Shown: positions 24,157 to 55,825 of the stretch, in pieces
How positions within the stretch are numbered: the first letter of the stretch is position 1
Layout of the letters: each line of letters begins with the position of its first letter
Assembly: GCA_002269645.1 (NCBI GenBank)
Contig: NIVC01003537.1
Coordinates: 1 to 64,000 of the forward strand
Source: Macrostomum lignano
Taxonomy: Eukaryota
Length of the DNA stretch: 64,000 nt
Direction: 5' to 3'
Made by a program: the position numbers and the translations under genes
Notes under the pieces: model-generated
The model's input: only the letters and a program-made list of their open reading frames with translations
Databases searched by the model: none
What the model was told of the DNA's origin: nothing

Positions 24157-26951
24157 ATGGGCTACAAATATGCTGCAATCAACTGCCATTCTGGCTATAT
24201 ACATCGAAAAAACTTCACATAGAATCCTGAACCGGACAGCAAAATTTCATTTTTCGAATTTCCTTTACACGATCCACTGCTTCTCTTAGAATGGCTGCGG
24301 TGTATTCGCAGAGAAAATTACAGCGCTACAAAACAATCGAGACTGCGTGCTCCTCGCACTTTAAGGACGATGACTTCATCGTCACGTCCCAGGACATCAA
24401 TCCTCGTCGCAAGCGCAAGAGAGATGGTGAAGTTCTAGTTAAACGTCTACTATCAGATAAAAAGTAACTCTGTTCCGACTGTATTTTCTCAACTTCCTGA
24501 ACGACTGCAGCCGTAAGCTACCCAATGTCGAACGGAGAGAACAACGGCAGAGAGGAGGCACCAACCATAACGAGCAAGACCGAATGAAAAGTGCAGCTGC
24601 GGAGTTCCTCAGCCAGGATGAAATTGCCTCGCTTGCCGACATCAAAGTGCAGCTTGAGTGCAACCTGATGCCCGCCGACTTTGTTGTTGTGGCAAAAACA
24701 GCCAGCATTACATTTCTTCTTGTTTGTGTAGACAGTGGTGATGTCCCTGAGATACTCTGCTCTCTGCAAATTCGCGACGACGACTTGACCGTTTCTGCAG
24801 GCGTCAAAGGACTGCCTGTGCAGCAGAAGAGATTGGTTCAATTTTTGGACAACGGTCAAGTTCGGCCATTTTCGCAAATTCAAAATCTGCCTGCCCAAAT
24901 TAAAGCTTGGACGACTTCGGATACAACCGATCGAGTTGAAGACAATAATTTAATTGAGGACGCAATTGATTGGCTTAACAAATGGACAGAAGTGTGCGAG
25001 GACACCTCCGAGCCGCTTCATCAACGGATTCAATTTCTTATCGAACAACTGGCAAAGCTGTCTTACGTCAAGAAGCCTTCATTGCGGTACTCTCCTTCCT
25101 GATTTGATCGTCTTCGCTATGATTCTCAAGTCCACAAGCACGGCATGCTATCAGTTGTTGTTGGACCAAGAGGTGCTGATTCTACCATCGGTGCAGCGAC
25201 TAACAGCAATTGCCAATCCGCTTTCAGTTACTGCCGGTGTTTCCGATGAACAAATGATGATGCTCAGCGCAGCGTACCTTCATCTTAGAACTCAAGATCT
25301 CTCGATCATGGAATCCAACGTAAATTAAATTATTGGTGAAAGTCATCTGAACAGAAGAATTGAATATTCTGCCGGAAATATCGTCGGCATGCAGGAGAGT
25401 ACCACAGCGTCAACTGTGCTCTGCATCATGGTGAAGCCGATTGCTGGCAAGTTCCGTGACGTTGTTGCGCTCTTTTCTCTGAGCAAGCTGACAGCAGATA
25501 TTCTGTATGCGCATTACCAGAGCGTCATGCATGGAAATGCTCAGCGCACCAATCTCAACGTTGTCACTGTCCTAGTCGACAACCATTCGGCTAATCAAGC
25601 TTTTTACATCCACAAGCTTTGTGGCGGCATTCTCCGAACGTGGATTACTCATCCTTACGACGTGGACAAGAAGATATTTCTGCTATTCGATCCAACTCAC
25701 ACAATTAAAAACAACTATAACAACTTTCAAAAAAGGAAAAGTCTTGAGCCTCCCCTCCTGGAGAGCCAGTTCTTTGTCTCTCCAGGGACCATGGCGACAT
25801 CATTTTAGCTGAATTCGCGAGTATCCGAGAGCTGTTCGGATGGGAAAAGGAAAAGCCACTAAAGCTGGCACCAAAGCTTATTAACTCAAGCGTCATGGAT
25901 CCGAAGACTATCCAGAAGACCTCAACAAAACTTTCACTAGCCGTATTTTCGGGTCTACTGCTAGCGCATTGCTGTACTATACCAGACACCAGGGTCAGCA
26001 GTGAAACGACACTGCAACTTTCGATATGGCGGTCACGCAGCTCTGGCAGGTGTTGAATGTAAAAACGACAATCGGCAAGCACAAGAGGAATTGCAGCAGA
26101 GATCCCACTACGTCGGACACCGATTGGAAGCTAAAATATTTGTCTGGCGTCGCAGACTAAGCCACACTCTCTCTGCTTTGGTTAAGGTGTCTCTGTACTG
26201 CTGTCCAATCTGATGTTTCAGTATGTCCTCCTTGGAGCGCTGCAATCGGATCCACTAGAAGGACTATTTGGGTGGTATCGGCACCGCAAAGGATTTGAAC
26301 TACTATGTGGTCCTGCAAGGACGTTATGGATGCTCAGAAAGCTATCCGATCAGTAGCTCGTATCATTACTGCAGTTCAGCGGTGTCCGGCCACTGGCCAT
26401 TCGAGCCCTGTCCGCCGACGCAAGCGTTGAGAGCCGGGCGATGGAGGCTGAAGAGATTGCCAGTCAGCTGATCCTGGGTGAACCAATTGAAGATGCAGAT
26501 GCTAATGTTGTCTACTACGTTGCAGGCAGGTAGGTTTGTTAGAGCCATCACTGTTCAAAGAAGTTGTACGTCATGTAATGAGCTGCTATTGTCTGTTCCA
26601 ACGGATACAGCAATCGATGGATCGTCCACTTTTCTGCAACAACAAGTAAATCGTGGCGGGTTGACTGAACCTTCAGAGCTTGCTTTTTCCTCCTGCAAGG
26701 CAGCCTTGGGGATCATCTCTCAGTTACAGACCTGCCAGCAGTTTCTGAATTCTTGGCATCAACATGTTGCATTATTTGAAACAATCAGTTCAGTGGTCTT
26801 GGAGCGCCTTCCATTAATTTACGCTTCCAAACACACTGCGAGTTCCAGCACCGAATTCTGCAGCCACTGTTCCGGAAGATGTTCAATGCTGCCGCAAAGA
26901 ACTGGACCGACAGATGCCGCGTCAGGTCGAAAAGCAGCCAAGTTTAATTAA
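24157..26951 (+). pseudogene. P-element/THAP9-like transposase remnant (THAP domain plus P-type DDE core), multiply frameshifted
   Basis: Degenerate THAP: MGYKY..NCHSGY, FFEFP..D..L..EW, SHF, SVPTVF. Transposase motifs LRYSP, LILPSVQRL, VLCIMVK, VLVDNHSAN and the D(2)H motif FLLFDPTHTIKN. Termini not identified. Confidence 0.85.
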
Positions 26952-28103
26952 TGAACAATCAAGTAAACCGTGAGTTTTCCTATATGATTTTTTTACGCCG
27001 TTTTCTTTTGTTTTTGGATATAATTCTCAATTCAGAAAATTGAATGCTTTCAGTGAATACTGAGTTGTAATTTACAATGCATATAAGACTGACATTTGGC
27101 TCTAATTACCGCAAAATCCGATAAAGCGTAACAATTTATGCGAAAATCAATTGAAAGAAACGTTTTTTAAATCGAATTCGCCATTCAGAATGATATAATT
27201 AGGCAATTCTATCTCGGCCCGGTTATGTACGCCTAGAAAAAAGCCTTTACTTCCAGTTTAATACGCTCGTATCTAAAATTCTATGATCAGTCTTTATTTG
27301 GACAGAGATTTCTCTGCACTCTACCCTCTCAGCTTACTATACAACTGGAACCCCTTCTCTATCGTTCCTTCCTCTTTTTTCGAGTTGCTTTGCTTAAAGC
27401 CCCTAAAATAAAAATGTTATTCCTCTTTGCCCTCTCTTTCTCAAAAAGTTATCGGCCTGGGTTGGACCTGTCTGTAGGGGTCACGCCCGGAGGTGGGGTG
27501 GGGATAATGAAATCAAGAAGTAACAAAGGACACAGAAGCAAAAGGGCACTGGGAGTAGAACAGGACTATACCAATACCATAGACCTTCTGAGGGCAGAAA
27601 GAGGGTTTATGGTATAGCTATTCCCTCCCGCTTTGCTACCGGCGCTCGCTAGACAATCGTTGTCACGCACTGCGACCGCTGATTCTTTGCATTGTTTTTC
27701 TGTTTGACGATCCTACAGACAATGCATTGTTTGTAGTAATGGATTGTTCTGCATTAAAAATGTGAATAATGATCGTCAAATTGCTAAACAATGGCGGGCA
27801 GAAACGTCATTTCTCTGCCCAAGAGCTTAAATTCATTAAACCCAGTGTGAAAGGGACGCGAGACTCGTTTCTCGGCCCACTACATAAGAAATAGTCTATG
27901 GCCAAAAGTGAATTTAAGAATTAAAGGAAAGAGGCAACCTCTGTCCGTTTAAGTTTCGGTATTTCACTGCAGAGCTTGTCTGAAGCCAAATAACATCATG
28001 TGTCTACTCGATCTGAATTGTATTCAAGGTGGTGATATCAGTGGCCTGCTTCGCGAAGAGATGGACCTTTTAACTTTCTTTGCTGGCAAAAAAGGCAGAC
28101 TAG

Positions 28104-28828
28104 TTGACCAAATGGACAGGACTACCTGTTCCTGGTGTTGGAAGCAGCTACGCTTTGGATCCTGAGTTGGACACTTTGCTGGAAGAGCTTGTTGATCTCG
28201 GAGCTGAAATAACGGCTGAGCACGAGTATCGTGAACTCAACGATACTGAGCTCGGTGGTATTCAGGATATGGAGAAGTCGGCTCGAACCCAGTCAACGGA
28301 TGCAAAGACTAAACAGCACGTTGCTCTGCTGAAGCAGTTTTTGCGCTCCAATGGTCTACCCGAAAACATCGAAGACATGCCAGTGCGCTACCTGGTGCAA
28401 TACCTGAGGCTCTGGTTTGTTTCACTCAAGCGGAAGGATGGTAACGTCTATAGTGTCAACAGTCTGGTAGGATTTCGTGCCAGCATTCATTGCTATCTGA
28501 AACAGGAGCGGGACGTTGACATGATTGGGAATGAGCTGTTTAATGCTTTTGAGCGTACGTATAAGGCGATGCTAACTGCTTCTGTGAAAGCTGCACGTAT
28601 TCTCGAAGAAGCGACTGGCTCCCGCCAGATTTAAGATTCCGACTTAAAGAAGCTTTCTTCGTACTTCGACCGCAGTGATCCTATAATTTCTTTCTGATTG
28701 CTTGGCATTTTGGTTTTCGAGGCCGTGAGTGGGTTCGAGAGCTGGCCCCTGATGCCATCATTTTCGGCACCGATGGCGGTCGTGAATGCATCGCTCTCAA
28801 GATTGACCGGCAAAGAGAAAAATGCTGA
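28104..28828 (+). pseudogene. Crypton-type tyrosine recombinase fragment (DUF3504/KCTD1-ZMYM-like), truncated
   Basis: YLRLWFVSLKRKDGNVYSVNSL..FRASIHCYL followed, after frameshifts, by WHFGFRGREWVREL (codons at 28703-28729), which carries the first catalytic Arg. Confidence 0.8.
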
Positions 28829-33538: not shown

Positions 33539-34298
33539 ATAAATTTGTTTTGTTATTCATTTTGCTGAAGTGTTCTAGCTGAATTATATTTTATGACACT
33601 ATGGGACAATAAATTTAAGAAAATACTATACATGTATGCAATTCGAAGCTATAATAAAATATATAAAAGTTAAGATATTGTACCATATGTAGCAAGTCCC
33701 CCAGATCTGGTAAGTTTACCCAAGTATTATAATAGCAAAGATCTTGCATGTTCTTGCAAGTACTTGCGCAGTAATCCAAGAAGATTTAGATAAGATCTGT
33801 TAAGAATCAACAAGTCAGGGAAGTTCACTGTTGTTTCAAAGAGATGAGCAAAAATCGAAAAACTTTATTGAACTTCGCAGGAAAAATATTGTAAGCAAAG
33901 TTATTATTCCTTTGGTAATGTGCACGTATTCATGCAAATTGCAAATGTAACAGCAACACGTACACAGCTATACTTTGCAGATATAAATTAGCAGCAGATA
34001 GTTGTGCTTTCAATCTAAAAGTAAATCTTATATTTGCGCTTTGATAAATTGAAATATTTTAATAGATTTTTTGCATCGCAAAGAATACATCTTATCCTAC
34101 CATACTCATTGGCTACAATCTACTTTGTTGAATCTTGTGCAGACGCAAAGCAATTTTTAATTTTAGAAGTATTGAACACTTTATTTAAAGCCAATTTGTG
34201 TCAATTAAATTTAGTTAAGTTAGTCATCAGTGAAAGCGTCATTAATTTCTGCCTCTCCATTTTGGTTTACTTCCTGAGAAAACATTTATTTTGTGATT

Positions 34299-36689
34299 AT
34301 GGATCGAATCAAAGGATACTGGAACACAATTCTTTCCGAATTATCAAGTCCGCTAAATCTTGCCCTCGTTGGTATTTGTGCTTTTCTGACCTATAAGATT
34401 TTCTTTGGTCGCTCAAAACCAGAGCTTCCACCGCCCAAGTCAAATCGTTTGCCTAAGATGAAGAAACGTGACTTTACTCGACAAGAGCTTGCGCGTTATA
34501 ACGGTGTTGACAATGATGAAAAGCGGATTTTGATTGCCATTCGAGGGACAGTCTTTGATGTGAGCAATCGAGGCCGCGATTTCTATGGCCCTGGTAAGTT
34601 TATACTTTATATTAAGGAGTAAGGAATATACTTAATACTTATTCTAATACTCAAACCAATGCTAAGACTTATGCTCAGAGGTGAACTGTAATCTATCATA
34701 GCTAGTAACAGCTGTTCTGTAGAATTAGTTTCAGAGGGTAAGAACTTTGCCCCAGAACAGCTTGTTGGCTTAACAGTGCAATTTTAATATTCCAAGCATT
34801 GCCATTAGGTCTAGAACACACTGAAATAAATTTTTAGAAGTTAGGCCTAATTTAGAGGCTATCTATAATATAGATCTATAATATATGCATTATTTCTAAC
34901 CATGATTGACTATAAAAAGTATATTACAACTAATAAATTTAAATTTTTATTAAATTAGGCCTAACAAATAAGCAGTGCTTATTTCCATGGTACCATATAT
35001 AAGAATAATTTTTGTCTTATTCCTAAAGTACCATGGGAATGATTTTCTGCTTATTTGCATAGTAGTGTAACGATGTTGATATTTATATTTTAAAAAATAA
35101 TAATTTAGTATTATTAATGTCTCTTTAGTATTTTATTAATTTATTTACTATTCATTAGCAAATCTTAAAGTTATTCAATATTTACACTTAAAATTTGTTT
35201 TACTGTATCCTTCATAGAAATAAGAGTATTACATTATTTTAAAGGTGGTTATATCGCGTTTTTGCGCTCTAGGCTTCCTCTCTTGCTCTGGTCTCGTTTC
35301 GTGCATGTTTTTGGTTGGTGCCTGTTACTATAGCTTACTAACAATAATTAAACGTCAATAGTTTAAATCCTGCCTGTTCAAATTATTAATACAACAAAAT
35401 AAAATCAGTCAAAGTTCAACATAGGACTATTCAACTCGATTCGGCCACAAGACTCTGACTCTCCTACTATGAAGACTCAGTTTACTATTGATCGTGCAGC
35501 CGTCAGCAACTTTAGCCATTAAGCACCGAACAAAGAGGGGTCGCGTCACATTAGCTGTCCTATTTTCTTTACATATACCATTGCCATAGAAATAATTTCT
35601 ATATTATCTGCATAGCACACTGACAAGATAGTTATCTTATATTCCCATAGATACTATAAGGAATAATGTAAATTTAAATTAAATAATTAAATTAAATAAT
35701 TAATTAAATAATAAGTAATTTAATATTTTTAAACTCATCTTTTTATGCCATTAACTATAAAACATAGATAAAATTAATATTGGTAGACTGTCTTAATCTA
35801 TTTGCATGAAAAAATAATTTTTTATATTGAAGATATGGAGCTTTTAGCTTCTTAAAGAATTCAAATTTAGGCAAGTTTTTCCTATTTTCATTAGTGATAG
35901 AGTTTCTAGCAAAATCGGAGTCAATTTGAATAAAACTATAGTAATGTATGTGTGTGCAACTTATCTTTGATCTACTTTAATTTACATGAATCAGATCAGC
36001 TGGCATTTGCACATACATATTACAGAAATACATTTCTCATTTTGCACTTTTCCAAAATGTTTGACTGTAATTTTAGTGTCACCTTATAGTCACAGTGCAA
36101 AATAAAAGCTTTCTAAATTATCTTACAAGAATTTTTGTAGTTAATATGCATGTTTAGGCACCTATTTTACTGTAGTTTCCATAGTATTACATAGCCATAT
36201 CCTAAGTATTAAAAACAATTTTTTAATGACTATTATTTAATTATCCAATATGAATTCTAAAAGTTTCTGCACTAGTTCACACTGCACAGAGTAAGAAGAT
36301 GGTTATTAAAATATTTTTTAACTTCAGGTGGTCCCTACGAGGACCTGGCTGGCCGCGATGCCTCTCGGGCCCTGGCCACCTTCTCCCTGAACAAGGACGC
36401 CTTCAAGGATGAGGTGGACGATCTAAGCGACTTGGACAGCTTTCAAGTTGAGAGCCTGGACAACTGGGAGCAGCAGTTCAAAGGTAGGGTGGCTTGAGTT
36501 AAGCACCGGATTTGCGTACACACCCAGCATCCAGCTGATACCATCCCATTATTGATCAATAAACGTTTATAACATTTATTTTCAGAAAAGTACGACACTG
36601 TAGGCAAACTGCTCAAGCCGGGCGAGCAGCCAACTGAATATCCGGACTCTGATGGTGACGGAGCTGAAGGTCACGCTAAAAATAATTAA
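34299..36689 (+). CDS. PGRMC1: Membrane-associated progesterone receptor component (MAPR, cytochrome b5-like heme/steroid-binding); exons 34299-34593, 36328-36483, 36586-36689
   Basis: N-terminal TM segment, then DFT..EL..Y.G, FDVS.GRDFYGPGGPY..LAGRDASRALATF, L..WEQQF.EKY..VGKLLKPGEQPTEY. All introns are GT-AG and phase-compatible. Confidence 0.95.
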
Positions 36690-37169
36690 ATTGATTTGGA
36701 TTTTCAACTTAATCTATTTATTTTGACTGCAAACTACTTTTTGCACCGTTGCTTATTTAAGTAGTATGTGTTGATTTTTTAAGACGCAAGTTTGTTAATT
36801 TTTTTATATTGAAACTGTCATTCAGTCTTTTAAGTAATTATTTTTAGTATATAGGATTTTTGTGTGCAAAAAATAATGAAAAAAATATACTAGCTGTTCG
36901 GTAGAAGCTGCTGATTTTTATTGCCTTGAGTAGATCATTAAAACCTGAAGAATTTGTGTCATTTACTCGTACTTTGCTTAGCAGCCTCCTTGGGACCAGC
37001 AATCATTGGTCCCTCACTCTAGCAAGGCATCGGAGGAATAAAAATTGAAGTTCACATTTAAAATAACTTGCATGCTTATAAGATACTTTGTTAGTTTTGT
37101 ACCAATAACGATGTTTAAAAAATAAAGGCATTACCATTGGCATCGGGCTTTCCAGCATCCATATCCTTG

Positions 37170-40100
37170 AGCATGGAATCTCAGCAACTCCCCATTGAGC
37201 CATGAAATCTCAGCAACTCCCCATTGAGCCATGGCATCTCAGCAACTCCCCTTGAGCCATGGCATCTCAGCAACTCCCCATTGAGCCATGGCATCTCAGC
37301 AACTCCCCTTAAGCTTTGTCATCTCAGCAACTCCCCCTTAAGCATTGTCATCTCAGCAACTCCCCTTGAGCCATGGCATCTCAGCAACTCCCCTTAAGCC
37401 TTGTCATCTCAGCAACTCCCCTTAAGCCTTGTCATCTCAGCATCTCCGCTTAAGCCATGTCATCTCAGCAACTCCCCTTGAGCCATGGCATCTCAGCAAC
37501 TCCCCATTGAGCCATGGCATCTCAGCAACTCCCCTTAAGCTTTGTCATCTCAGCAACTCCCCATTGAGCCATGGCATCTCAGCAACTCCCCTTGAGCCAT
37601 GGCATCTCAGCAACTCCCCATTGAGCCATGGCATCTCAGCAACTCCCCTTAAGCTTTGTCATCTCAGCAACTCCCCATTGAGCCATGGCATCTCAGCAAC
37701 TCCCCTTAAGCCTTGTCATCTCAGCAACTCCCCCATTGAGCCATGGCATCTCAGCAACTACCCCATTGAGCCATGGCATCTCAGCAACTCCCCATTGAGC
37801 CATGGCATCTCAGCAACTCCCCATTGAGCCATGGCATCTCAGCAACTCCCCTTAAGCCTTGTCATCTCAGCAACTCCCCATTGAGCCATGGCATCTCAGC
37901 AACTCCCCTTGAGCCATGGCATCTCAGCAACTCCCCATTGAGCCATGGCATCTCAGCAACTCCCCTTAAGCTTTGTCATCTCAGCAACTCCCCTTAAGCC
38001 TAGTCATCTCAGCAACTACCCTTGAGCCATGACATCGATCAGCAACTCCCCTTAAGCTTTGTCATCTCAGCAACTCCCCATTGAGCCATGGCATCTCAGC
38101 AACTCCCCTTAAGCCTTGTCATCTCAGCAACTCCCCATTGAGCCATGGCATCTCAGCAACTACCCCATTGAGCCATGGCATCTCAGCAACTCCCCATTGA
38201 GCCATGGCATCTCAGCAACTCCCCTTAAGCTTTGTCATCTCAGCAACTCCCCATTGAGCCATGGCATCAGCAACTCCCCTTAAGCATTGTCATCTCAGCA
38301 ACTCCCCTTGAGCCATGGCATCTCAGCAACTCCCCTTAAGCCTTGTCATCTCAGCAACTCCCCTTAAGCCTTGTCATCTCAGCATCTCCCCTTAAGCCAT
38401 GTCATCTCAGCAACTCCCCTTAAGCCATGTCATCTCAGCAACTCCCCATTGAGCCATGGCATCTCAGCAACTCCCCTTAAGCCTTGTCATCTCAGCAACT
38501 CCCCTTAAGCCATGTCATCTCAGCAACTCCCCTTGAGCCATGGCATCTCAGCAACTCCCCCATTGAGCCAAGGCATCTCAGAAACTCCCCATTGAGCCAT
38601 GGCATCTCAGCAACTCCCCATTGAGCCATGGCATCTCAGCAACTCCCCATTGAGCCATGGCATCTCAGCAACTCCCCATTGAGCCATGGCATCTCAGCAA
38701 CTCCCCTTAAGCCTATAGTCATCTCAGCAACTACCCTTGAGCCATGGCATCTCAGCAACTCCCCTTAAGCATTGTCATCTCAGCAACTCCCCTTGAGCCA
38801 TGGCATCTCAGCAACTCCCCTTAAGCCTTGTCATCTCAGCAACTCCCCTTAAGCCTTGTCATCTCAGCATCTCCCCTTAAGCCATGTCATCGCAGCAACT
38901 CCGCTTAAGCCTTGTCATCTCAGCAACTCACCTTAAGCCTTGTCATCTCAGCAACTCCCCTTAAGCCATGTCATCTCAGCAACTCCCCTTAAGCCTTGTC
39001 ATCTCAGCAACTCCCCTTAAGCCATGTCATCTCAGCAACTCCCCCTTGAGCCATGGCATCTCAGCAACTCCCCCATTGAGCCAAGGCATCTCAGAAACTC
39101 CCCATTGAGCCATGGCATCTCAGCAACTCCCCATTGAGCCATGGCATCTCAGCAACTCCCCATTGAGCCATGGCATCTCAGCAACTCCCCATTGAGCCAT
39201 GGCATCTCAGCAACTCCCCTTAAGCCTATAGTCATCTCAGCAACTACCCTTGATCCATGGCATCTCAGCAACTCCCCATTGAGCCATGGCATCTCAGCAA
39301 CTCCCCTTAAGCCTATAGTCATCTCAGCAACTACCCTTGAGCCATGGCATCTCAGCAACTCCCCTTAAGCATTGTCATCTCAGCAACTCCCCTTGAGCCA
39401 TGGCATCTCAGCAACTCCCCTTAAGCCTTGTCATCTCAGCAACTCCCCTTAAGCCTTGTCATCTCAGCATCTCCCCTTAAGCCATGTCATCTCAGCAACT
39501 CCCCTTAAGCCATGGCATCTCAGCAACTCCCCATTGAGCCATGGCATCTCAGCAACTCCCCTTAAGCCTTGTCATCTCAGCAACTCCCCTTAAGACATGT
39601 CATCTCAGCAACTCCCCCTTGAGCCATGGCATCTCATCAACTCCCCCATTGAGCCAAGGCATCTCAGCAACTCCCCATTGAGCCATGGCATCTCAGCAAC
39701 TACCCTTGATCCATGGCATCTCAGCAACTCCCCATTGAGCCATGGCATCTCAGCAACTCCCCTTAAGCCTATAGTCATCTCAGCAACTACCCTTGAGCCA
39801 TGGCATCTCAGCAACTCCCCTTAAGCATTGTCATCTCAGCAACTCCCCTTGAGCCATGGCATCTCAGCAACTCCCCTTAAGCCTTGTCATCTCAGCAACT
39901 CCCCTTAAGCCTTGTCATCTCAGCATCTCCCCTTAAGCCATGTCATCTCAGCAACTCCCCTTAAGCCATGGCATCTCAGCAACTCCCCATTGAGCCATGG
40001 CATCTCAGCAACTCCCCTTAAGCCTTGTCATCTCAGCAACTCCCCTTAAGACATGTCATCTCAGCAACTCCCCCTTGAGCCATGGCATCTCATCAACTCC

Positions 40101-40280
40101 CCCATTGAGCCAAGGCATCTCAGCAACTCCCCATTGAGCCATGGCATCTCAGAAACTCCCCATTGAGCCATGGCATCTCAGCAACTCCCCATTGAGCCAT
40201 GGCATCTCAGCAACTCCCCATTGAGCCATGGCATCTCAGCAACTCCCCCATTGAGCCATGGCATCTCAGCAACTCCCCCA
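37170..40280 (+). repeat. 26-28-bp satellite (GAGCCATGGCATCTCAGCAACTCCCC(A/C)TT / AAGCCTTGTCATCTCAGCAACTCCCC), about 3.1 kb
   Basis: Continuous tandem array with two main unit variants and block duplications. Confidence 0.97.
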
Positions 40281-40763
40281 TGGCATCCCAGCTTTGAGTA
40301 AAAACCACTTCCTTTATGTAAATATACACGTACATATACATGTCGATGCTGCAGAAACTCATGTGTGTAGTTCTACGAGTATTTACTAGAATCTCTTGTA
40401 CTGCCAAGCACGTGACGTTCAGCTCCAAAACTTCCCGTGAGAAAGCAGCAGGCCTGAGATCTGTGAGCCGCTTCTCACTGCTGCCACTACTGAGGGCTCT
40501 GCGGCCTCACTCTGGCGGCCTCAGCAACTCGGCTGCTGTCACGATCGCAGCTCCACAGTGAAACGTGACTCGGACAGCCACATCGGACCTGCAACTGCAG
40601 CAGAGCCTCAGCTGAGGCCGCGCCACTCAATCTGGCGAGATCCCACGCCCTCCACGCATTCCAGCAGCAGCTCGGGTGGATAAATGCCGACTCGCAATGC
40701 CTGCTCAAATTTGCAACTCAAAGTGGCCGCTCCAATCAGCGACTCCCATTGGCGACTCAGCAA

Positions 40764-41558
40764 ATGCAGCACCGCCAGCTACTCGCTGCCTGCCTCGCCG
40801 CAGCCACTGCAGCTCTGGTGCTCACCGGCGCCTCTGCTCAGTGTCCCGGACACGGCTCTGCACCTGACAGAGGCGTCACCCCACCTGTGGACGGCCTCGT
40901 GGCTGCGTTCGATTTCAGGAGGGGCCTGCACAACCTGGTGGACCCGCGCGCCTTTGCCATCGAGGACCAGTTTGGCGTGGAGAGGTCGGCAGAGGACGGG
41001 GCCTGCTTCAAGCAGAATTCAAGTGCCAGATACAGGGAGTTCTACAATGTCGGAGCTCCCATGGCATTCAATGAGTCGATCTGGAACTCAGCAGAGTGGA
41101 CCATGTACTTCAGGCTGACTCGGAGCAGCGGCAGCTGGGTTCGTTTTCTGTCGGTTCCGAGCGACCATTTGCGCCCGGATGGGGTGCTAAACGTTTATGC
41201 TGTCATTGATCAATATTCTAGAAACAGGTTTAGATTTTATGTTGGGCAACATGACCTTCGAAGCCGGCATTATAACGAGCACCACTTCTACGGATCGGGC
41301 TGTGCTGGCAGCTGGTGCGACATTCGGCTGGCAATGAAGAATCACATTTTGGATTCTCCTGCCATCGGATGGCCGCTGAGTTCTGATTATCAGAAGTTTA
41401 CTGATTTTGTTAATGAACTGGGACTGCAGCAGCTGCAGATTGGAAATCTTTATCCATCTTCTGGTTCCCAGCGGCTCTGCGTGAGGTGCTTCGGGGTCGC
41501 CCGCAGGCAGCTGAGCGCCCATGAGGTGCGGCAGGCGATGTCGGCTTTCTGCCCCTGA
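40764..41558 (+). CDS. Secreted protein, lectin-cluster copy A: signal peptide plus ConA/LamG-like domain only (intronless)
   Basis: Open ORF. Hydrophobic leader MQHRQLLAACLAAATAALVLTGASAQ. Clear paralogue of 49295-50968, lacking both C-type lectin domains in frame. The ConA/LamG-like fold is inferred from GLVAAFDF and WTMYFRL only. Confidence 0.8.
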   Translation: MQHRQLLAACLAAATAALVLTGASAQCPGHGSAPDRGVTPPVDGLVAAFDFRRGLHNLVDPRAFAIEDQFGVERSAEDGACFKQNSSARYREFYNVGAPMAFNESIWNSAEWTMYFRLTRSSGSWVRFLSVPSDHLRPDGVLNVYAVIDQYSRNRFRFYVGQHDLRSRHYNEHHFYGSGCAGSWCDIRLAMKNHILDSPAIGWPLSSDYQKFTDFVNELGLQQLQIGNLYPSSGSQRLCVRCFGVARRQLSAHEVRQAMSAFCP

Positions 41559-42229: not shown

Positions 42230-42425
42230 TTGGTCAATCAGTTGTCTATGGCTAAAATTGGCGGCCACTGGCCATTTTTCGCCCAGATGAGGTGCTGCCA
42301 CCAAATTAATACCTTTATGCTGGCATTAATAAAACTTCTGGGGACAGGTTTGAATTTTATGTTGGGGAACATGACCTTGCGATCCAACATTATAACGAGC
42401 ACTACTTCGATGAATTTGGCTGTGA
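42230..42425 (+). pseudogene. Lectin-cluster relic C (middle of the C-terminal domain)
   Basis: DRFEFYVGEHDLAIQHYNEHYFDEFGC aligns to copy A NRFRFYVGQHDLRSRHYNEHHFYGSGC. In-frame stop upstream; truncated at about 42425. Confidence 0.75.
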
Positions 42426-42919
42426 CGCTTCCGACTGGCGCGCAGGGTCCGCCCTCTTGTGGGATGTCGGCTCCTCCGCGGGATTGAGTTGCCAGCACTC
42501 TCCAGAGGCGGCAGAAGGGGCGGCTTTCGCACTCCTGGCCGTTCCTCCGCTTTGCGCTTGAGAAAAGCTTTGTAGCGAGCAATGCTACGGGCCTTCTTTT
42601 TAGAGGTCTGAGGTCCGCCGTCCTGTTGTCCAGCCACTTCGGTATTGTCCTGAGTGGCGACAGAAGCTGACTAAGAGTCACCGGAGGTCCCGGTGTTGCG
42701 AATGTCCGGCTGGGCGGCGATACCAACCGCAGTTGGCGCTCCAGCAGCCTCGGACGTGTTGCAAGTAAATGAATACTCCATGAGTCGCTGAAAGGTGAAT
42801 GGGGACTAGAGGTGAGAAGCTGCTGGGCCGAAACCCCAAACCCAACAGCCAGCCAAAATATAGCGACCCGGGGTGCTTAGGCCCTTACCGGCCCGACCGC
42901 TAGCAACCGAGAAACTACC

Positions 42920-44560
42920 CGGCTAAGAGCCCGGCTTGGAGAGACCATACGCTCGTAGGCCGAACCAAAGGAACATCAGCGCGGTACTACACTGGTAGGC
43001 TGTCCGCATCCTGTTAAGGTCAGAGGGTGATACCTGTTCTTCAGAGCCGTGGCCAGAGGTACCTGATACGCACAGGTTCACTTCCGGACGGAGCCCGTAC
43101 CCAAATCGGCCAAGACAGAAGCCAAGGCCACGGATGGGGTGCAGGTGTAGGATACAATTCCGATAATTCTGTGCTGTGGTCGGTCTGCACTTTGCGGCCG
43201 ATCTGGTCTGATGGCGTTGGTTGCTCTTTGTGGCAAAGTCATCCAGTTCATGCCAGGTCTTCATGTTTGGATTTTCCAGCTTTTTGCTTTCTTCTGATTG
43301 AAGAACGAGCTTAGCCAGACCATATTCAAGCTCTCTTGCCATGTTCGAAGTTACTCACCTTGTTAGTTTGTCCAGCCGATACCATGTTGGCCTGCGCTCG
43401 TGAAGAGGGTCGCTGCTCCTCGAACGATGTTTGAGGTCCAGTCACCTTGCACCCGAAATCACACATTGGAAAGCGCGCGTTTCTGTGGGTGCATTTTTAT
43501 GCCTCCTGTGTTCCACAGGTGCCATGCAGTCTCATTTAGTAAGATTAGTAGGTTTCCTTATTCTCATGGTGAAACACTGATGCCGGTGCCTTGCAAGGTC
43601 ACATCCCAGCTCGATGACGCTTTCTTTACTATCTGTCCGAGTCTCGCTGAGCCCAGGTTTGCCCGCTGCACGTTCCACATCGCGATTCTCACTTTCTTCT
43701 GGTTCCAGATTCTTTGCGCAGCTTCTAAACGTTGTTTGTTCCTTTATTTTACGGTGTTTCTCTCTCTCTTCGCGTTTCGACGCCTGTTCCTTGCCCTTCT
43801 CTGCTCACTGGTTCCCGGTCCAGGTTTGCAATTTGGTTCGTATTCGCGATCCGCTAACTCTTCCGCTAACTCTTCCGCTAACTCTTCCGCTAACTCTTCC
43901 GCTAACTCTTCCGCTAACTCTTCCGCTAACTCTTCCGCTAACTCTTCCGCTAACTCTTCCGCTAACTCTTCCGCTAACTCTTCCGCTAACTCTTCCGCTA
44001 ACTCTTCCGCTAACTCTTCCGCTAACTCTTCCGCTAACTCTTCCGCTAACTCTTCCGCTAACTCTTCCGCTAACTCTTCCGCTAACTCTTCCGCTAACTC
44101 TTCCGCTAACTCTTCCGCTAACTCTTCCGCTAACTCTTCCGCTAACTCTTCAGTCTTCCGTGTGCCGCGTCGCTGCCACCCGATAGGCTTTCCTCTAACC
44201 CTAAGCCGTCGGTCATATCGTCCTCTGATGTCGGTGTGTCGTCTTCGCCAGAAGGGGCTCTGTGGCTATCGTCCAGCTGGTCGTTAAGTACTTCTCTTCT
44301 TCTGTGTGAGTTGATCGGTCTTCCAGGACAATGTCAGAAATTTCGTTAATCCTGTCCTGTCCCGTCCTTGATAGCGTCTCTGCCTTTCGCACAAATTTTC
44401 CAGTTCTCTTATTAGACTTCGACAGACAATTTCGCGCGGTAGCTAATAAGTGAGCAGATTCAGCAGGTATCAAGTAGGTTGAGCAATGGCTAGAGTTACG
44501 ATCATGCGCTTCCGGCAGGTTGCAGTGATGAGCCATTGTACAATAATTCTTAATAAGCAA
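42920..44560 (-). mobile_element. Degenerate APE-type non-LTR retrotransposon (RTE-like) 5' part, without RT
   Basis: Minus strand KVRIAMWNVQRANL (about 43660-43700) is the APE endonuclease first motif. Downstream DDFATK and GRFGYG resemble RTE GDFNAK and GKFGLG. Stops and frameshifts present. Confidence 0.6.
43850..44149. repeat. Perfect 12-bp tandem repeat (TCCGCTAACTCT)25
   Basis: 300 bp with no variant units. Reads (EELA)n on the minus strand. Confidence 0.97.
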
Positions 44561-47467: not shown

Positions 47468-47520
47468 TAGCCTTAGAAAGAGTCGGAATACAGAATAGAA
47501 TTATCTTTCCTTTCCTTTCC

Positions 47521-47800
47521 TTGCATTTCCTTAATCATATCAACAAGCACGACTCCAACGGCAGCTGGTCCGACATTCAACTGGCAATAAAGAACCGCAT
47601 TTTGGATTCTCCTGCCATCGGACGGTCGCTGGGCGTTCAATATCGGAACTGGACTGATGGGACTCATGAAGTGGGACTGCAGCAGCTGCAGCTCGGAAAT
47701 TATTATTTACTTCTGTGTGAGCTGCTTCGGAGTCACCCGCAGGCAGCTGAGCGCCGATGAGGTGCGGCAAGCGATGTCGGCCTTCTGCCCCCGAGTATAA
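47521..47800 (+). pseudogene. Lectin-cluster relic D (3' half of the C-terminal domain)
   Basis: GSWSDIQLAIKNRILDSPAIG...GLQQLQLG...FGVTRRQLSADEVRQAMSAFCP with small frameshifts. 5' part lost next to the mariner. Confidence 0.8.
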
Positions 47801-49294: not shown

Positions 49295-50968
49295 TTAGGG
49301 GCAGAAGGTCGACATCGCCTGACGCACTTCGTCGGAGCTCAGCCGCCTGCGGGCGACTCCGAAGCACCTCAGGCAGATTTTCCGAGCTTCAGAATAAAAC
49401 GGCGACCCGAATCCAACACGGAGCTGCTGCAGTCCCAATACATCCGCATCGAATGTCGAGTTCCAATATTGAACTCTCAGCGGCTCTCTGATGGCAGGAG
49501 AATCCAAAATGCCATCCTTGATTGCCAGCCGAATGTCGCACCAGTTGCCAGCACAGCCCGATCCGTTGAACTCGTGGTTGTTGTTATGCACGGTGAAATG
49601 CGTTGAGTTCCCGAGGTCGCGTTGCAGAACGTTTAAAACGAACTGCTCAGCACTGGAGGAATAGAGCTCAGCACGGAGGCTTGAGTACGAATTCGGATCG
49701 GAGTGCTCGCTGCGCACAGACAGAAACTCGACGCCACTTTTATTGCCTACGGTAAGCCTAAAGTACATTGTGTACTCTGATGTACTGAGAATCGACTCAT
49801 TGAATGCCACGGGAGCTCCGACATTGTAGAACTCCCTGTATCTGGCACTTGAATTCGCCTTGAAGCAGGCCCCGTCCTCTGCCGACCTCTCCACGCCAAA
49901 CTGGTCCTCGATGGCGAAGGTGCGCGGGTCCAACAGGTTGTGCAGGCCCCTCCTGAAATCGAACGCAGCCACGAGGCCGTCCACCTGCGGCGGCGGCGAC
50001 GCAGACGGCGGTGGCGGGGAGTTGCCGTCCGACGCCTCCGTCTTGCACACGAACCTGTGCCTGCTGTGGCACCTGTCGCTGCGCAGTCGACCAGCTGACA
50101 GCGTGACGCAGTTCACAGTCCAGTCCGCACTGTCCGGGTGTCCAGTCTCCCATGCGGGCAGCTTGTTGTCGTGTTTCCCTGAGAAATCCGTCCACTGGTA
50201 GCAGAGCTCGCGACCCGCACTGTCAGGGAAGCAGGGGTTCAGCTTGATGAGGCCGAGCCACACCGAGTCGAGCAGCTCTGCCGACTCGCAGCTGTCGATT
50301 CCGAAGCTGAGCTTGTTCACAAAGTCCAGCTCAGACTGGGTGAGCACCGACGCCAGCTGCGACGAGTTTCGCTGGCAGTAGAAGTTGGCCTCGTTGAAGT
50401 TGGCCTCAAACTGCGGCATCACGTAGCACTGCTTGTCGTGCAGCCACCAGCCGCTGGGACATCGGCCCTTCGACCGCCACCACAAGTCGACGAGACTGCT
50501 GGAGTTGGCGCTCAACTTGCACACAAACGGGTGCCGCTCGTGATACAGCGAGTTGAGCCACCACTCACCGTCACTTCGGATCAGAGGCTTGTGAACGCTG
50601 TCCAGCTGAGAGAAGTTGTGTCTCTCGAAGCTACCTACGCCGCCGCCGTCCGTCCACCTGTAGCTTGTAGGGTCGGCCAGACGGTCGAGGTCGGTGCCGA
50701 ACAAACCGATCCAGGCGTCTCTGCAGTGAGACAGTCGGCCTACCAGTCGGTTCTCTTGCTCACTTTGGATGGACGCGAGCTGAGCCCGGTGAGACAGACA
50801 CGTCTGCTCGGCCTGAAACCAGTAGTTCGGCTCACTGAACCACTTGTAGCATGAGTGAGCTCGGTGTGTCCAGCCGTGTCCGGGACACTGAGCAGAGGCG
50901 GCGCCGGTGAGCAGCAGAGCTGCAGTGGCTGCGGCGAGGGAGGCAGCGAGTAGCTGGCGGTGCTGCAT
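49295..50968 (-). CDS. Secreted lectin, copy B: signal peptide, two C-type lectin domains, Pro-rich linker, ConA/LamG-like domain (intronless)
   Basis: 562-aa open ORF. CTLD hallmarks CP.GW...CY, W..A...C....QLASI, WIGL/WLGL, WTD and FVCK occur twice. Linker SPPPPSASPPP. Confidence 0.9.
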   Translation of the reverse strand: MQHRQLLAASLAAATAALLLTGAASAQCPGHGWTHRAHSCYKWFSEPNYWFQAEQTCLSHRAQLASIQSEQENRLVGRLSHCRDAWIGLFGTDLDRLADPTSYRWTDGGGVGSFERHNFSQLDSVHKPLIRSDGEWWLNSLYHERHPFVCKLSANSSSLVDLWWRSKGRCPSGWWLHDKQCYVMPQFEANFNEANFYCQRNSSQLASVLTQSELDFVNKLSFGIDSCESAELLDSVWLGLIKLNPCFPDSAGRELCYQWTDFSGKHDNKLPAWETGHPDSADWTVNCVTLSAGRLRSDRCHSRHRFVCKTEASDGNSPPPPSASPPPQVDGLVAAFDFRRGLHNLLDPRTFAIEDQFGVERSAEDGACFKANSSARYREFYNVGAPVAFNESILSTSEYTMYFRLTVGNKSGVEFLSVRSEHSDPNSYSSLRAELYSSSAEQFVLNVLQRDLGNSTHFTVHNNNHEFNGSGCAGNWCDIRLAIKDGILDSPAIREPLRVQYWNSTFDADVLGLQQLRVGFGSPFYSEARKICLRCFGVARRRLSSDEVRQAMSTFCP

Positions 50969-51439
50969 TTGCTGAGTCGCCAATGGGAGTCGCTGATTGG
51001 AGCGGCCACTTTGAGTTGCAAATTTGAGCAGGCATTGCGAGTCGGCATTTATCCACTCGAGCTGCTGCTGGAATGCGTGGAGGGCGTGGAATCTCGCCAG
51101 ATTGAGTGGCGCGGCCTCAGCTGAGGCTCTGCTGCAGTTGCAGGTCCGATGTGGCTGTCCGAGTCACGTTTCACTGTGGAGCTGCGATCGTGACAGCAGC
51201 CGAGTTGCTGAGGCCGCCAGAGTGAGGCCGCAGAGCCCTCAGTAGTGGCAGCCGTGTGAGAAGCGGCTCACAGATCTCAGGTCTGCTGCTTTCTCACGGG
51301 AAGTTTTGGAGCGAAACGTCACGGGCTTGAGAGTGCAGGAGATTCAAGTACATAAAGCTACACAGGTTTCCTTTTACGTGCCAGTTTTTTGCTGCATCAA
51401 CATGTACGAGCGTATAAAGACTGCGGCCTCTATGCAAAG

Positions 51440-51848
51440 CTGAGATGCCAAGGCTCAATGGGGGAATTGCTGAGATGCCCAATGGCTCAATGGGGGAGTT
51501 GCTGAGATGCCATGGCTCAATGGGGGAGTTGCTGAGATGCCATGGCTCAATGGGGGAGTTGCTGAGATGCCATGGCTCAATGGGGGAGTTGCTGAGATGC
51601 CATGGCTCAATGGGGGGGAGTTGCTGAGATGCCAAGGCTCAATGGGGGAGTTGCTGAGATGCCAAGGCTCAATGGGGGGGAGTTGCTGAGATGCCAAGGC
51701 TCAATGGGGGAGTTGCTGAGATGCCATGGCTCAATGGGGGGGAGTTGCTGAGATGCCAAGGCTCAATGGGGGAGTTGCTGAGATGCCAAGGCTCAATGGG
51801 GGAGTTGCTGAGATGCCATGGCTCAATGGGGGAGTTGCTGAGATGCCA
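51440..51848 (-). repeat. Same 26-28-bp satellite as 37170-40280, inverted, about 0.4 kb
   Basis: gagttgctgagatgccatggctcaatgggg units are the reverse complement of the upstream array. Confidence 0.95.
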
Positions 51849-51865
51849 GTTGGCCAGGTCAGGCC

Positions 51866-51940
51866 AGGTCAGTCCAGGCGTCTCTGCAGTGAGACAGTTG
51901 GCCTACCAATCGGTTCTCTGGCTCACTTTGGATTGACTCG
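51866..51940 (-). pseudogene. Lectin-cluster relic E (duplicated piece of CTLD1)
   Basis: ccaggcgtctctgcagtgagacagttggcctaccaatcggttctc nearly matches 50712-50770. Confidence 0.75.
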
Positions 51941-53013: not shown

Positions 53014-54650
<1,637 letters not shown>

Positions 54651-55046
54651 TTCTTGGAAAGTTCGGAAACGGGCAACACCGGAGACTGCCATATTTTATA
54701 GCGTTTTATACTTCGTTATTTCGATTTTACCTTTGGCCAATAATCTTTTCCTACTTTATCAAATTTGTTGACTGCTTCTTGAGGAACTACATGTACGAGC
54801 TGTATTAACGACCGATTTCTTGGAAATCAAACCCGGAAAAACTGGAATTAGGTCAAGCTTTACTTGACTAAATGCAGAACAACTTTCAAACTTAGGGTGA
54901 AGACCAAAGAATGTTTAGGCTAATGGACTGATTGATCAAGACAAACCTGCTTTTAACAAAATTATGCACTCTCTAAAAAAAACTTTACCCCCGGCTGCCG
55001 ATGCGCAGTTTCTTAATCCGCAATTCGTGTTTTTTAACAGGTCTTA

Positions 55047-55436
<390 letters not shown>

Positions 55437-55825
55437 CATCTATCCCTACCCGACAAAGATTATTTATGCCTTGGCGACAACCTGGACGGCAGGCTCGGAT
55501 AATCAAATCAGCCGTCTTGTGGTCACCGGCCAGCCAGGCAGAGTGCAGCAGTGGCAAGATGAGGCCGCTCAGCATCCTCGCACAGGCTATTAATTTCATC
55601 CTCCGGCCCTCTGAGCCTGACTCGATCCCAATTTTCTATCACACGCTGTCATCGAGTTTGAGTCAAGTTTGTTATGGGTGCATCTGCCGTGCAGCAAACG
55701 TTTGCCTTTGCTCAAAGCAGTGGCCTTTCACTGCGTGCACAAGTGAATAATTAGACTTGAAAATTCATTTTCAAATTTAACCTGTAGAACTTGCCTTTAT
55801 GAGGGTATCAAGATCTCAAGAATTG

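What the first reader, a model, noticed from the sequence alone, without database searches (positions are those of the whole stretch)
40895..41558. Hypervariable segments on a conserved scaffold, next to near-identical 5' DNA
Seen: A and B are almost identical in the 5' flank, signal peptide and first ~65 aa of the terminal domain (VDGLVAAF...AFNESI). They then diverge sharply, with length changes, between fixed blocks (TMYFRLT, GSGCAG.WCDIRLA, ILDSPAI, LGLQQL, C.RCFGVARR.LS..EVRQAMS.FCP). Relics C and D vary in the same intervals. Inference: diversifying selection on binding loops and/or gene conversion homogenising the 5' half across the inverted repeat, a pattern typical of immune or allorecognition receptors.
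Basis: partly seen in the sequence, partly recalled or inferred. Interest (0 to 1): 0.72.

Follow-up and report, generated by a model that had tools for sequence, protein, structure and literature searches.

The report
Mosaic flatworm lectin gene family
Two neighbouring genes of the flatworm Macrostomum lignano, and their copies elsewhere in the genome, have almost identical front halves and very old, scrambled rear halves because the copies keep overwriting parts of each other; this is an ordinary way for gene families to evolve, here seen in an undescribed secreted lectin family.

Summary
The window is Macrostomum lignano contig NIVC01003537.1. A (40764-41558, +) and B (49295-50968, -) are convergent, intronless paralogues of a secreted family. 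B has a signal peptide, two C-type lectin domains, a linker and a ~225-aa Cys-rich terminal domain (TD). A lost both lectin domains by an in-frame deletion.

The 5' flank, signal peptide and first 66 TD codons are 96-100% identical, with synonymous difference pS 0-0.05. Beyond that pS is 0.6-1.0, with indels, between short conserved islands.

Six further full-length copies on four other contigs (A', B', E, F, F', H) and two relics (C, D) show the same gradient. The SP+lectin halves of copies at unrelated loci differ by pS ~0.03, while the TD cores are saturated and the 3' flanks cannot be aligned.

Several results point to ectopic gene conversion or recombination:
- the heterogeneity of pS along the gene
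- a significant PHI test
- a shared indel in a mosaic copy (H)
- amino-acid variants shared between paralogues
- high GC3 in the homogenised tracts

Positive selection is not shown. pN/pS is below 1 where it can be measured, F/F' is under purifying selection, and there are only non-significant hints elsewhere. The TD has no relatives by sequence. Low-confidence models suggest a ConA-like jelly roll. An immune or allorecognition role is untested.

The parts
37165..40278 (.). 28-nt satellite array (about 109 copies) upstream of gene A; outer part of the inverted duplication
   Evidence: Tandem Repeats Finder; matches the inverted array upstream of B at 95-100%
40380..40763 (+). 5' flank, putative core promoter and 5' UTR of A. 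It is 90-98% identical to the flank of B. The last ~100 nt, including a TATA-like ATAAAT at 40680-40685, are nearly identical in A, B, E and F
   Evidence: Inverted repeats I1/I4; four-way alignment of upstream regions. The promoter function is inferred
40764..40838 (+). Signal peptide of A (MQHRQLLAACLAAATAALVLTGASA)
   Evidence: Read from the sequence; aligned with B, E and F. The cleavage site is inferred
40839..40886 (+). Junction left by an in-frame deletion of both C-type lectin domains: QCPGHG joined to the last linker repeat SAPDRGVTPP
   Evidence: Four-way protein alignment
40887..41084 (+). Terminal domain, homogenised 5' third (66 codons). A-B pS is 0.03-0.05 and GC3 is 0.78
41085..41291 (+). 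Terminal domain, main variable core (IWNSAEW...HYNEHHFY). pS is saturated, indels are present and nucleotide identity to B is 38-62%. It contains the small conserved motif TMYFRLT
41292..41369 (+). Conserved island GSGCAGSWCDIRLAMKNHILDSPAIG. There are 0 synonymous differences to B, so this is an internal conversion tract
   Evidence: inverted repeat I3
41370..41474 (+). Second and third variable segments on either side of LGLQQL. They include the 19-codon stretch with pN/pS about 10 between A and E (chosen after the fact)
41475..41558 (+). C-terminal conserved island C.RCFGVARR.LS..EVRQAMS.FCP plus the stop codon. GC3 is 0.92. Homology to all paralogues ends about 10 nt after the stop
   Evidence: (I6)
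42277..42432 (+). Relic C: a fragment of the TD core, of the A type (76-81% nucleotide identity to A)
   Evidence: tblastn; alignment
47518..47797 (+). Relic D: the 3' third of a TD, with a frameshift, a ~29-nt deletion and no stop codon
   Evidence: tblastn in two frames; sequence; alignment
49295..49984 (-). Terminal domain of B (229 codons plus stop)
49985..50038 (-). Pro-rich linker of B (…DGNSPPPPSASPPPQ). It is unlike the TSAPDGGV repeats of E, F and H
50039..50872 (-). Two C-type lectin-like domains of B (about aa 38-157 and 173-315)
   Evidence: Pfam PF00059 E=2.8e-19, two stretches; PDB sequence matches to multi-CTLD receptors
50873..50968 (-). Signal peptide and the first mature residues of B
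50969..51354 (-). 5' flank of B, the inverted copy of the flank of A
51439..51848 (.). 30-nt satellite (about 13 copies), the inverted counterpart of the array upstream of A
51865..51940 (-). Relic of the first lectin domain of a further copy (68 nt, 93% identical to B 50710-50777)
   Evidence: (D11)

Best explanation
The interval is the C-terminal domain of gene A. A belongs to a small multigene family, found so far only in Macrostomum lignano, of intronless genes for secreted proteins. The full architecture is signal peptide, two C-type lectin-like domains, a repeat linker and a ~225-residue terminal domain (TD) with six conserved cysteines.

The paralogues are old. Their TD cores are saturated at synonymous sites and their 3' flanks cannot be aligned. 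They nevertheless keep exchanging sequence by ectopic gene conversion or non-allelic recombination. Exchange is efficient wherever identity is still high: the core promoter, signal peptide, lectin domains, first ~30-85 TD codons and two short TD islands. Those parts therefore stay about 97-100% identical and GC3-rich. Tracts end inside the TD, at different points in different pairs. Occasional exchange of whole variable segments produces mosaics such as H.

Copies are also born and die. Both happen here: there is an inverted duplication in the window and segmental duplicates elsewhere, alongside relics C and D and stops or frameshifts in E, H and F'.

Shown: the mosaic history and the family architecture.
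Inferred: that the TD is a ligand-binding beta-sandwich whose diverged segments give the paralogues different specificities, and that divergence is kept up by selection and/or by loss of the homology that conversion needs.
For: Identity of the genome: the only homologues among 5.8e9 and 1.8e9 searched proteins are M. lignano hypothetical proteins. B is the called gene on NIVC01003537.1.

Architecture: Pfam Lectin_C twice in B. Six invariant Cys in the TD of A, B, E and F.

Gradient of synonymous difference: among B, E and F at unrelated loci pS is 0.023-0.032 over 325 codons, against 0.59-0.83 in the TD rest (Fisher p down to 1e-52). For A-B the values are 0.046 vs 0.43 (p=7e-7).

Non-coding DNA shows the same asymmetry: the 5' flank is 96-99% identical and the 3' flank cannot be aligned.

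Mosaicism:
- Informative sites switch from AB|EF to AE|BF to AF|BE along the TD.
- The longest run of same-topology sites gives P=0.002 counting sites, and P=0.05-0.07 when sites are collapsed to one per codon.
- PHI test P=0.0004-0.003.
- H is A-like over alignment columns 136-360, then carries B's 15-nt insertion.
- Relic C is of the A type.

Conversion signature: GC3 is 0.78-0.92 in homogenised blocks against 0.42-0.64 in variable ones. The last block has GC3 0.88-0.92 in A, B and E but 0.52 in F, which is not homogenised there.

Variants shared between paralogues in the N-terminal half: Q/H66, L/W166 and K/E183, with all four combinations present for 66x183.

No local hypermutation: in the TD core pS is 0.009 for B-B' and 0.051 for F-F'.

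Birth and death: premature stops or frameshifts in E, H and F', and fragments C and D.

Fold hint: both AlphaFold2 models are all-beta with a C-terminal helix, and their Foldseek neighbours are ConA-like jelly rolls.
Against: - Only seven distinct full-length sequences were available (A' is identical to A), from one assembly, and no genome-wide census of copies was possible.
- In the saturated core the alignment is partly uncertain, so pS and the informative-site splits there are noisy.
- Gene conversion cannot be told apart from unequal crossing-over or chimeric duplication with these data.
- The stops and frameshifts in E, H and F' might be long-read assembly errors.
- The structural assignment rests on models with pLDDT 46-48. 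No Pfam or PDB sequence match supports it.
- Nothing is known about expression or ligand.
Confidence: 0.75

Rival explanations
1. Diversifying (positive) selection on binding loops is the main cause of the pattern. The copies are young throughout, and amino-acid change has been driven in the variable segments, as in immune or allorecognition receptors.
For: - Variable segments sit between conserved Cys/Gly/aromatic blocks, and N-glycosylation sites differ between copies.
- B vs B' has 6 nonsynonymous and 1 synonymous difference in the TD core (pN/pS 1.8, not significant).
- One 19-codon segment has pN/pS about 10 between A and E (uncorrected p=0.01).
- A-B has 6 nonsynonymous and 0 synonymous differences in the GSGCAG...ILDSP island.
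Against: - Synonymous sites are saturated in the variable segments (pS 0.6-1.0) and pN/pS is 0.4-0.8 there.
- The 3' non-coding flanks are as diverged as the core, which selection on protein cannot explain.
- F vs F' shows purifying selection in the TD (pN/pS 0.14).
- All signals with pN above pS are small, chosen after the fact and not significant after correction.
- Selection may still help maintain the divergence, but it does not create the contrast between the 5' and 3' halves.
Confidence: 0.12
2. Recent whole-gene duplications were followed by a targeted, locally raised mutation rate (hypermutation or error-prone repair) in the 3' two-thirds of the TD.
For: - The change from about 97% to about 45% nucleotide identity happens within some 50 nt.
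- The variable core is AT-richer than the rest of the gene.
Against: - The young pairs show no excess of substitutions in the core. B-B' has pS 0.009 in the core against 0.018 in the N-terminal half. F-F' has 0.051 against 0.019, with pN only 0.007.
- Variable-core types are shared between copies: A with C and H, and B with H including a shared indel.
- Breakpoints differ between pairs.
Confidence: 0.04
3. The pattern reflects only different functional constraint (conserved lectin module, relaxed C-terminal tail), or it is an assembly artefact of a repeat-rich polyploid genome.
For: - M. lignano assemblies are repeat-rich and contain duplicated haplotypes or homeologues (own knowledge). L004 duplicates the window locus.
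- Several copies carry stops or frameshifts.
Against: - Constraint cannot explain identity at synonymous sites and in the 5' non-coding flank.
- Two independent contigs give the same A/B structure.
- The TD keeps six invariant Cys and open frames in A, B, B' and F, and F/F' is under purifying selection.
Confidence: 0.05

Closest known systems
Multi-CTLD secreted or receptor lectins (Pfam PF00059; for example mannose-receptor-family proteins, and the M. lignano two-CTLD protein BOX15_Mlig018359g1 = P0006)
   Same: B, E, F and H carry two tandem C-type lectin-like domains after a signal peptide. P0006 is 47% identical over the two-CTLD part.
   Different: P0006 and the other CTLD proteins lack the terminal domain. 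CTLD2 has HPD and LRS where the canonical sugar and Ca2+ motifs EPN/QPD and WND would sit (read from the sequence). A has no CTLD at all.
Concanavalin A-like lectin/glucanase fold (LamG-like domains, GH16 glucanases, galectins, and the N-terminal jelly-roll subdomain of the receptor-binding part of clostridial neurotoxins)
   Same: Both TD models are beta-sandwiches ending in a helix. Their Foldseek neighbours are almost all of this fold (best E 2e-6, TM 0.47-0.49). The order of motifs recalls LamG-type domains (a resemblance from memory, so a lead and not a test).
   Different: There is no Pfam hit at E<=10 and no PDB sequence hit. The models have pLDDT 46-48. The resemblance is to a generic carbohydrate- or protein-binding scaffold and says nothing about toxicity.
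Diversified invertebrate recognition families that evolve by gene conversion and recombination: Biomphalaria FREPs/CREPs and sea-urchin Sp185/333 (PMC12074976, PMC1988830)
   Same: Clustered and dispersed secreted paralogues, built from conserved and highly variable blocks, with evidence of recombination or gene conversion between members.
   Different: The domains are different: there is no IgSF, fibrinogen or 185/333 element. Immune induction and somatic diversification are unknown here. The family seen is small (seven distinct full-length sequences, eight counting A', plus relics).
Concerted evolution with a polarity boundary in multigene families (for example palindrome arms, or MHC/KIR and plant R-gene clusters with homogenised and diverged modules)
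   Same: Homogenised tracts include non-coding flank and are GC3-rich. Breakpoints lie inside the gene. Birth-and-death relics lie nearby.
   Different: Homogenisation here also links loci on different contigs whose flanks are unrelated, not only the local inverted repeat.

Membership tests
C-type lectin-like domain superfamily (PF00059) | Significant match to the CTLD profile | tested here: met
   B: Lectin_C E=2.8e-19, two stretches. F and P0006 likewise. A itself has none, because both domains are deleted.
C-type lectin-like domain superfamily (PF00059) | Canonical Ca2+/carbohydrate motifs (EPN or QPD, plus WND) for sugar binding | tested here: not met
   By reading B against the canonical motif positions, CTLD2 has ...WETGHPD... 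and ...GRLRSDRC... (HPD and LRS), and CTLD1 has neither motif (sequence). Sugar binding therefore cannot be assumed.
ConA-like lectin/glucanase (LamG-like) domains | Sequence match to a family of the clan | tested here: not met
   No Pfam family at E<=10 for any of four TDs. A PDB profile search gave nothing relevant. The only distant hit is a local 56-column match to an uncharacterised repeat of a bacterial protein (hhalign probability 52%).
ConA-like lectin/glucanase (LamG-like) domains | Jelly-roll beta-sandwich fold | tested here: inconclusive
   Two AlphaFold2 models (pLDDT 45.7 and 47.5, pTM 0.47) are all-beta. Foldseek neighbours are ConA-like folds: E 2e-6 for model 1 and only 5e-4 to 1e-2 for model 2.
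Paralogues under ectopic gene conversion (concerted evolution) | Synonymous divergence that differs strongly along the gene, and identity that extends into non-coding flank | tested here: met
   pS 0.02-0.05 vs 0.43-0.83, Fisher p 7e-7 to 1e-52. The 5' flank is 96-99% identical and the 3' flank cannot be aligned.
Paralogues under ectopic gene conversion (concerted evolution) | Phylogenetic incongruence or recombination signal between segments | tested here: met
   The supported topology changes along the TD. PHI P=0.0004-0.003. H is a mosaic with a shared indel. All four variant combinations occur for N-terminal sites 66x183.
Paralogues under ectopic gene conversion (concerted evolution) | GC enrichment of converted tracts (biased gene conversion) | tested here: met
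   GC3 is 0.78-0.92 in homogenised blocks vs 0.42-0.64 in variable blocks. In F the last block, which is not homogenised, has GC3 0.52. This is a correlation, not proof.
Genes under diversifying selection (immune or allorecognition type) | dN/dS significantly above 1 at a subset of sites | tested here: inconclusive
   pS is saturated in the variable core with pN/pS 0.4-0.8. Among young pairs B/B' gives 1.8 (not significant) and F/F' gives 0.14. One window chosen after the fact reaches p=0.01. There are too few sequences for site models.
Genes under diversifying selection (immune or allorecognition type) | Variable residues cluster on one surface of the fold | not testable with these tools
   The models are too poor (pLDDT below 50 over most of the variable core).
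Diversified invertebrate immune families (FREP, CREP, Sp185/333) | Family-defining domains (IgSF plus fibrinogen, IgSF plus CTLD, or 185/333 elements) | tested here: not met
   Pfam finds only Lectin_C, with no IgSF or fibrinogen domain.
Diversified invertebrate immune families (FREP, CREP, Sp185/333) | Expression induced by infection, or diversity beyond the germline | not testable with these tools
   No expression data could be reached. The gene identifiers are absent from the searchable literature.

The most novel reading that the evidence does not exclude
The family is a flatworm-specific recognition system, either humoral immune lectins or mating/self-recognition proteins. In it a previously unclassified jelly-roll-like domain carries the specificity. 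Gene conversion both keeps the lectin 'handle' uniform and shuffles old variable cassettes between loci to make new specificities, in functional analogy to snail FREPs or sea-urchin Sp185/333. The lectin-less copy A would act as a decoy or as a free recognition module.
Probability: 0.15. Interest if true: 0.65.

Novelty: new member of a known kind. Interest (0 to 1): 0.36.

Why it matters
The case is a clean, small example of one mechanism producing two opposite outcomes. Ectopic gene conversion keeps one module of a gene family nearly identical across unlinked loci, and another module stays anciently diverged and mosaic. It also flags an undescribed secreted lectin family in a regeneration and ageing model flatworm, with a domain that no sequence library recognises.

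For annotation, gene A, the relics and the stop-containing copies are currently missed or truncated in the public gene set.

For evolutionary inference, the case is a warning. 'Hypervariable segments on a conserved scaffold' can arise from mosaic history alone and should not be read as positive selection without looking at dS.

Tried and rejected
- **Pfam on the TD.** No family matched A or B at E<=1, nor four TDs at E<=10.
- **PDB sequence searches.** B, a TD profile and a profile of the bacterial repeat were searched. Only the CTLDs matched.
- **Word-indexed protein searches.** Three searches and one exhaustive profile search of 1.84e9 representatives found only M. lignano copies plus one weak hit. 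That hit is P0004, an Anaerolineae MAG protein (E=3e-4). hhalign gives only a local 56-column match at 52% probability, so I do not rely on it.
- **Structure prediction.** Two AlphaFold2 runs with 4-sequence alignments gave pLDDT 46-48. They support a fold-class hint only, not mapping of the variable residues.
- **Exact-sequence look-ups of A and B as read from the TTG.** They failed because the called model of B starts further upstream and A is not annotated.
- **Literature.** A search for the locus tags found nothing. Searches on Macrostomum with lectin or gene conversion found nothing on this family.
- **C and D as two halves of one gene split by an insertion.** Rejected, because both contain the ...HYNEH... 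segment and therefore overlap.
- **Retrocopies.** The genes are intronless and their 5' homology ends are nested at -84, -160 and beyond -450. This remains possible as the way the copies were born, but it cannot explain the gradient of dS inside the gene.
- **L006.** The locus was not available to scripts, so its TD was pasted in.
Full report
**What is in the window.**
ORF listing shows two long open frames of the same family in convergent orientation. A is at 40749-41558 (+, 269 codons from a TTG; the real ATG is at 40764). B is at 49295-50983 (-, 562 codons). BLASTP aligns residues 47-269 of A with residues 334-562 of B at 63% identity, and the two signal peptides at 68%. Pfam finds two C-type lectin domains in B (E=2.8e-19) and nothing in A. 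The last ~225 residues of both, the terminal domain (TD), match no Pfam family even at E<=10 and no PDB sequence.

tblastn of A and B against the window finds two further TD fragments. Relic C is at 42277-42432 (+) and relic D at 47518-47791 (+, in two frames). A 24-residue fragment of the first lectin domain lies at 51865-51936 (-).

The repeat scan shows that A and B sit in an inverted duplication. The 5' flanks match at 98% (40473-40832 vs 50900-51259) and 90% (40380-40478 vs 51256-51354). Beyond these flanks lie 28-30-nt satellite arrays in inverted orientation, at 37165-40278 and 51439-51848.

**Where the window comes from.**
The only homologues of the TD among 5.8 billion clustered proteins are hypothetical proteins of the free-living flatworm Macrostomum lignano. 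B is the gene called on contig NIVC01003537.1 of assembly GCA_002269645.1, and window coordinates equal contig coordinates. An exhaustive profile search of 1.84 billion representatives adds nothing except one weak bacterial hit (E=3e-4). Profile-profile comparison supports that hit only locally, at 52% probability. The TD is therefore a lineage-restricted domain as far as these libraries can show.

In a protein-guided codon alignment of A and B, 62 of the first 66 TD residues are identical. Nucleotide identity in 45-nt windows runs 100, 93, 96, 100, then 73, 58, 52, 38, 62, 80, 89, 73, 62, 48, 87, 82%.

The decisive point is that synonymous sites follow the same profile. For A-B, pS is 0.03 and 0.00 in TD codons 1-66, then 0.63-0.78 in codons 67-140. 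It is 0.00 in the island GSGCAG...ILDSP and 0.3-0.5 afterwards. Synonymous differences in the first 67 TD alignment columns against the rest are 2/44 vs 47/108 (Fisher p=7e-7).

**The same pattern links unlinked loci.**
Exact-sequence look-ups gave four more contig regions of the same assembly:
- **E** (L001:9434-11293). It has an in-frame stop about 45 codons before the end.
- **F** (L002:10022-11839).
- **F'** (L005:10019-11815). It has a stop in the second lectin domain and lies next to a duplicated kinesin gene on the same contig as F.
- **H** (L006:10022-12122). Its TD has a stop and a 1-nt deletion.
- **L004**, a second copy of the whole window locus. It carries A' (protein identical to A) and B' (98% identical to B).

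The flanks of the E, F and H loci are unrelated to the window.

Among B, E and F, pS over the 325 codons of signal peptide plus lectin domains is only 0.023-0.032. That is about the same as between the two copies of the same locus, B and B' (0.018). In the TD beyond its first third pS is 0.59-0.83 (Fisher p 3e-31 to 1e-52).

The non-coding DNA agrees. About 100 nt upstream of the ATG, including a TATA-like ATAAAT, are nearly identical in A, B, E and F. Homology starts at nested points (-84 in E, -160 in F, beyond -450 in A/B) and stops about 10 nt after the stop codon in every pair. Protein-level constraint cannot make synonymous sites and a 5' flank identical while leaving the 3' flank unalignable. 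The two parts of the gene therefore have different histories.

**Evidence that the history is recombinational.**
1. Breakpoints differ between pairs. A stays close to B up to about TD nt 180, close to E up to about nt 255, and close to H up to about nt 360. F departs after about nt 135.
2. Four-taxon informative sites switch from AB|EF (TD codons 9-41) to AE|BF (67-84) to AF|BE (93-119). The longest run of like sites gives P=0.002 counting sites, or 0.05-0.07 when collapsed to one per codon.
3. A pairwise-homoplasy (PHI) test that I implemented, on 90 informative sites of A, B, E, H and F, gives P=0.0004-0.003.
4. H is a visible mosaic. Its core is of the A type (71-97% identity), but it carries the 15-nt insertion and adjacent sequence of B. 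Relic C is also of the A type. Variable-core types are thus old, and they are shared and re-assorted between copies.
5. In the lectin half the same amino-acid variants recur in different paralogues: Q/H66, L/W166 and K/E183. All four combinations occur for sites 66 and 183.
6. GC3 is 0.78-0.92 in the homogenised blocks and 0.42-0.64 in the variable ones. The last block has GC3 0.88-0.92 in A, B and E, which are similar there, but 0.52 in F, which is not. GC-biased gene conversion would produce this.

**Selection.**
In the variable core pS is saturated and pN is 0.3-0.6, so dN/dS cannot be estimated and is nominally below 1. The young pairs are more informative, but they are small and they disagree:
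- B vs B': 6 nonsynonymous and 1 synonymous difference in the TD beyond codon 66 (pN/pS 1.8, p=1.0), against pN/pS 0.29 in the N-terminal half.
- F vs F': pS 0.051 and pN 0.007 in the TD, which is clear purifying selection.
- The 19 codons after ILDSPAIG: pN/pS about 10 between A and E (uncorrected p=0.01, window chosen after looking).

These pairs also show no excess of substitutions in the core, which argues against local hypermutation. The named 'fixed blocks' are only partly structural. F changes most of them and keeps the six cysteines and a few Gly and aromatic positions. Their identity among A, B, E and H includes synonymous sites, so it reflects conversion as well as constraint.

**What the protein probably is.**
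All copies begin with a plausible signal peptide, and by eye I saw no hydrophobic stretch long enough for a membrane anchor. The products are therefore probably secreted. This is inferred from the sequence, with no predictor run.

The lectin domains lack the canonical EPN/QPD and WND motifs, so sugar binding is not assured.

Two AlphaFold2 models of the TD, built from 4-sequence alignments, have pLDDT 45.7 and 47.5 and pTM 0.47. Both are all-beta with a C-terminal helix. Their Foldseek neighbours in the PDB are nearly all concanavalin-A-like jelly rolls:
- the N-terminal jelly-roll subdomain of clostridial neurotoxin binding domains
- GH16 glucanases
- galectin-8
- a legume lectin

I read this as a weak hint of a generic lectin-like beta-sandwich, nothing more. 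The variable residues could not be mapped on a surface.

Gene A lost both lectin domains through an in-frame deletion that joins ...QCPGHG to the last linker repeat. It is intact and identical in both contigs.

**Verdict.**
The conversion is family-wide, however, not a property of the inverted repeat. The selection and immune-receptor parts remain conjecture. The phenomenon, concerted evolution of one module with ancient mosaic divergence of another plus birth and death of copies, is well known from other multigene families. What is new is the family itself and its unclassified domain in a flatworm. No step had to be referred.

Noticed in passing
window 37165-40278 and 51439-51848: Large 28-30-nt satellite arrays (109 and 13 copies) lie in inverted orientation immediately upstream of A and B. 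They form the outer part of the inverted duplication. E and F have no such array upstream.
   Followed up: partly
window 43850-44151; L004 around 16863-17116: There is a perfect 12-nt microsatellite (25 copies). Identity between the window and the second contig of the same locus (L004) switches here from 97.9% on the B side to 99.94% on the A side. This could be a haplotype recombination point or an assembly join.
   Followed up: partly
window 40839-40886: Gene A lacks both lectin domains through an exact in-frame deletion between the signal-peptide end (QCPGHG) and the last linker repeat. The frame stays open and is identical in the second contig. A is not in the public gene set.
   Followed up: partly
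L001:11171-11173; L006:11825-11827 and ~11918; L005 (stop in second lectin domain): Three paralogues (E, H, F') carry premature stops or a frameshift while their 5' halves remain homogenised. They are either pseudogenes still acting as conversion partners, or long-read assembly errors.
   Followed up: no
L001, L002, L005, L006 linkers; window 49985-50038: The linker is a variable-number TSAPDGGV repeat, with roughly 6 to 22 copies in F', F, E and H. B and B' instead have an unrelated Pro-rich linker, flanked on both sides by homogenised sequence.
   Followed up: no
window 17824-19365 (+): A 513-aa ORF with a DUF4371 domain (E=9e-18), typical of hAT/ZBED-type transposase-derived proteins. Neighbouring ORFs at 24584-28634 have no Pfam match and may belong to a mobile element.
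   Followed up: partly
window 60033-61289 (-), 53014-54650 (-), 34293-34622 (+): Ordinary host genes or fragments lie around the locus: a PTB/PID-domain protein, an EF-hand (AIF-1-like) gene, and a cytochrome-b5-like fragment. The first two also flank B' in L004.
   Followed up: partly
window 10334-11360, 53014-53571, 54985-55750, 56707-57408: Several tandem-repeat tracts read as long open frames on both strands. They are likely non-coding satellites, not genes.
   Followed up: no
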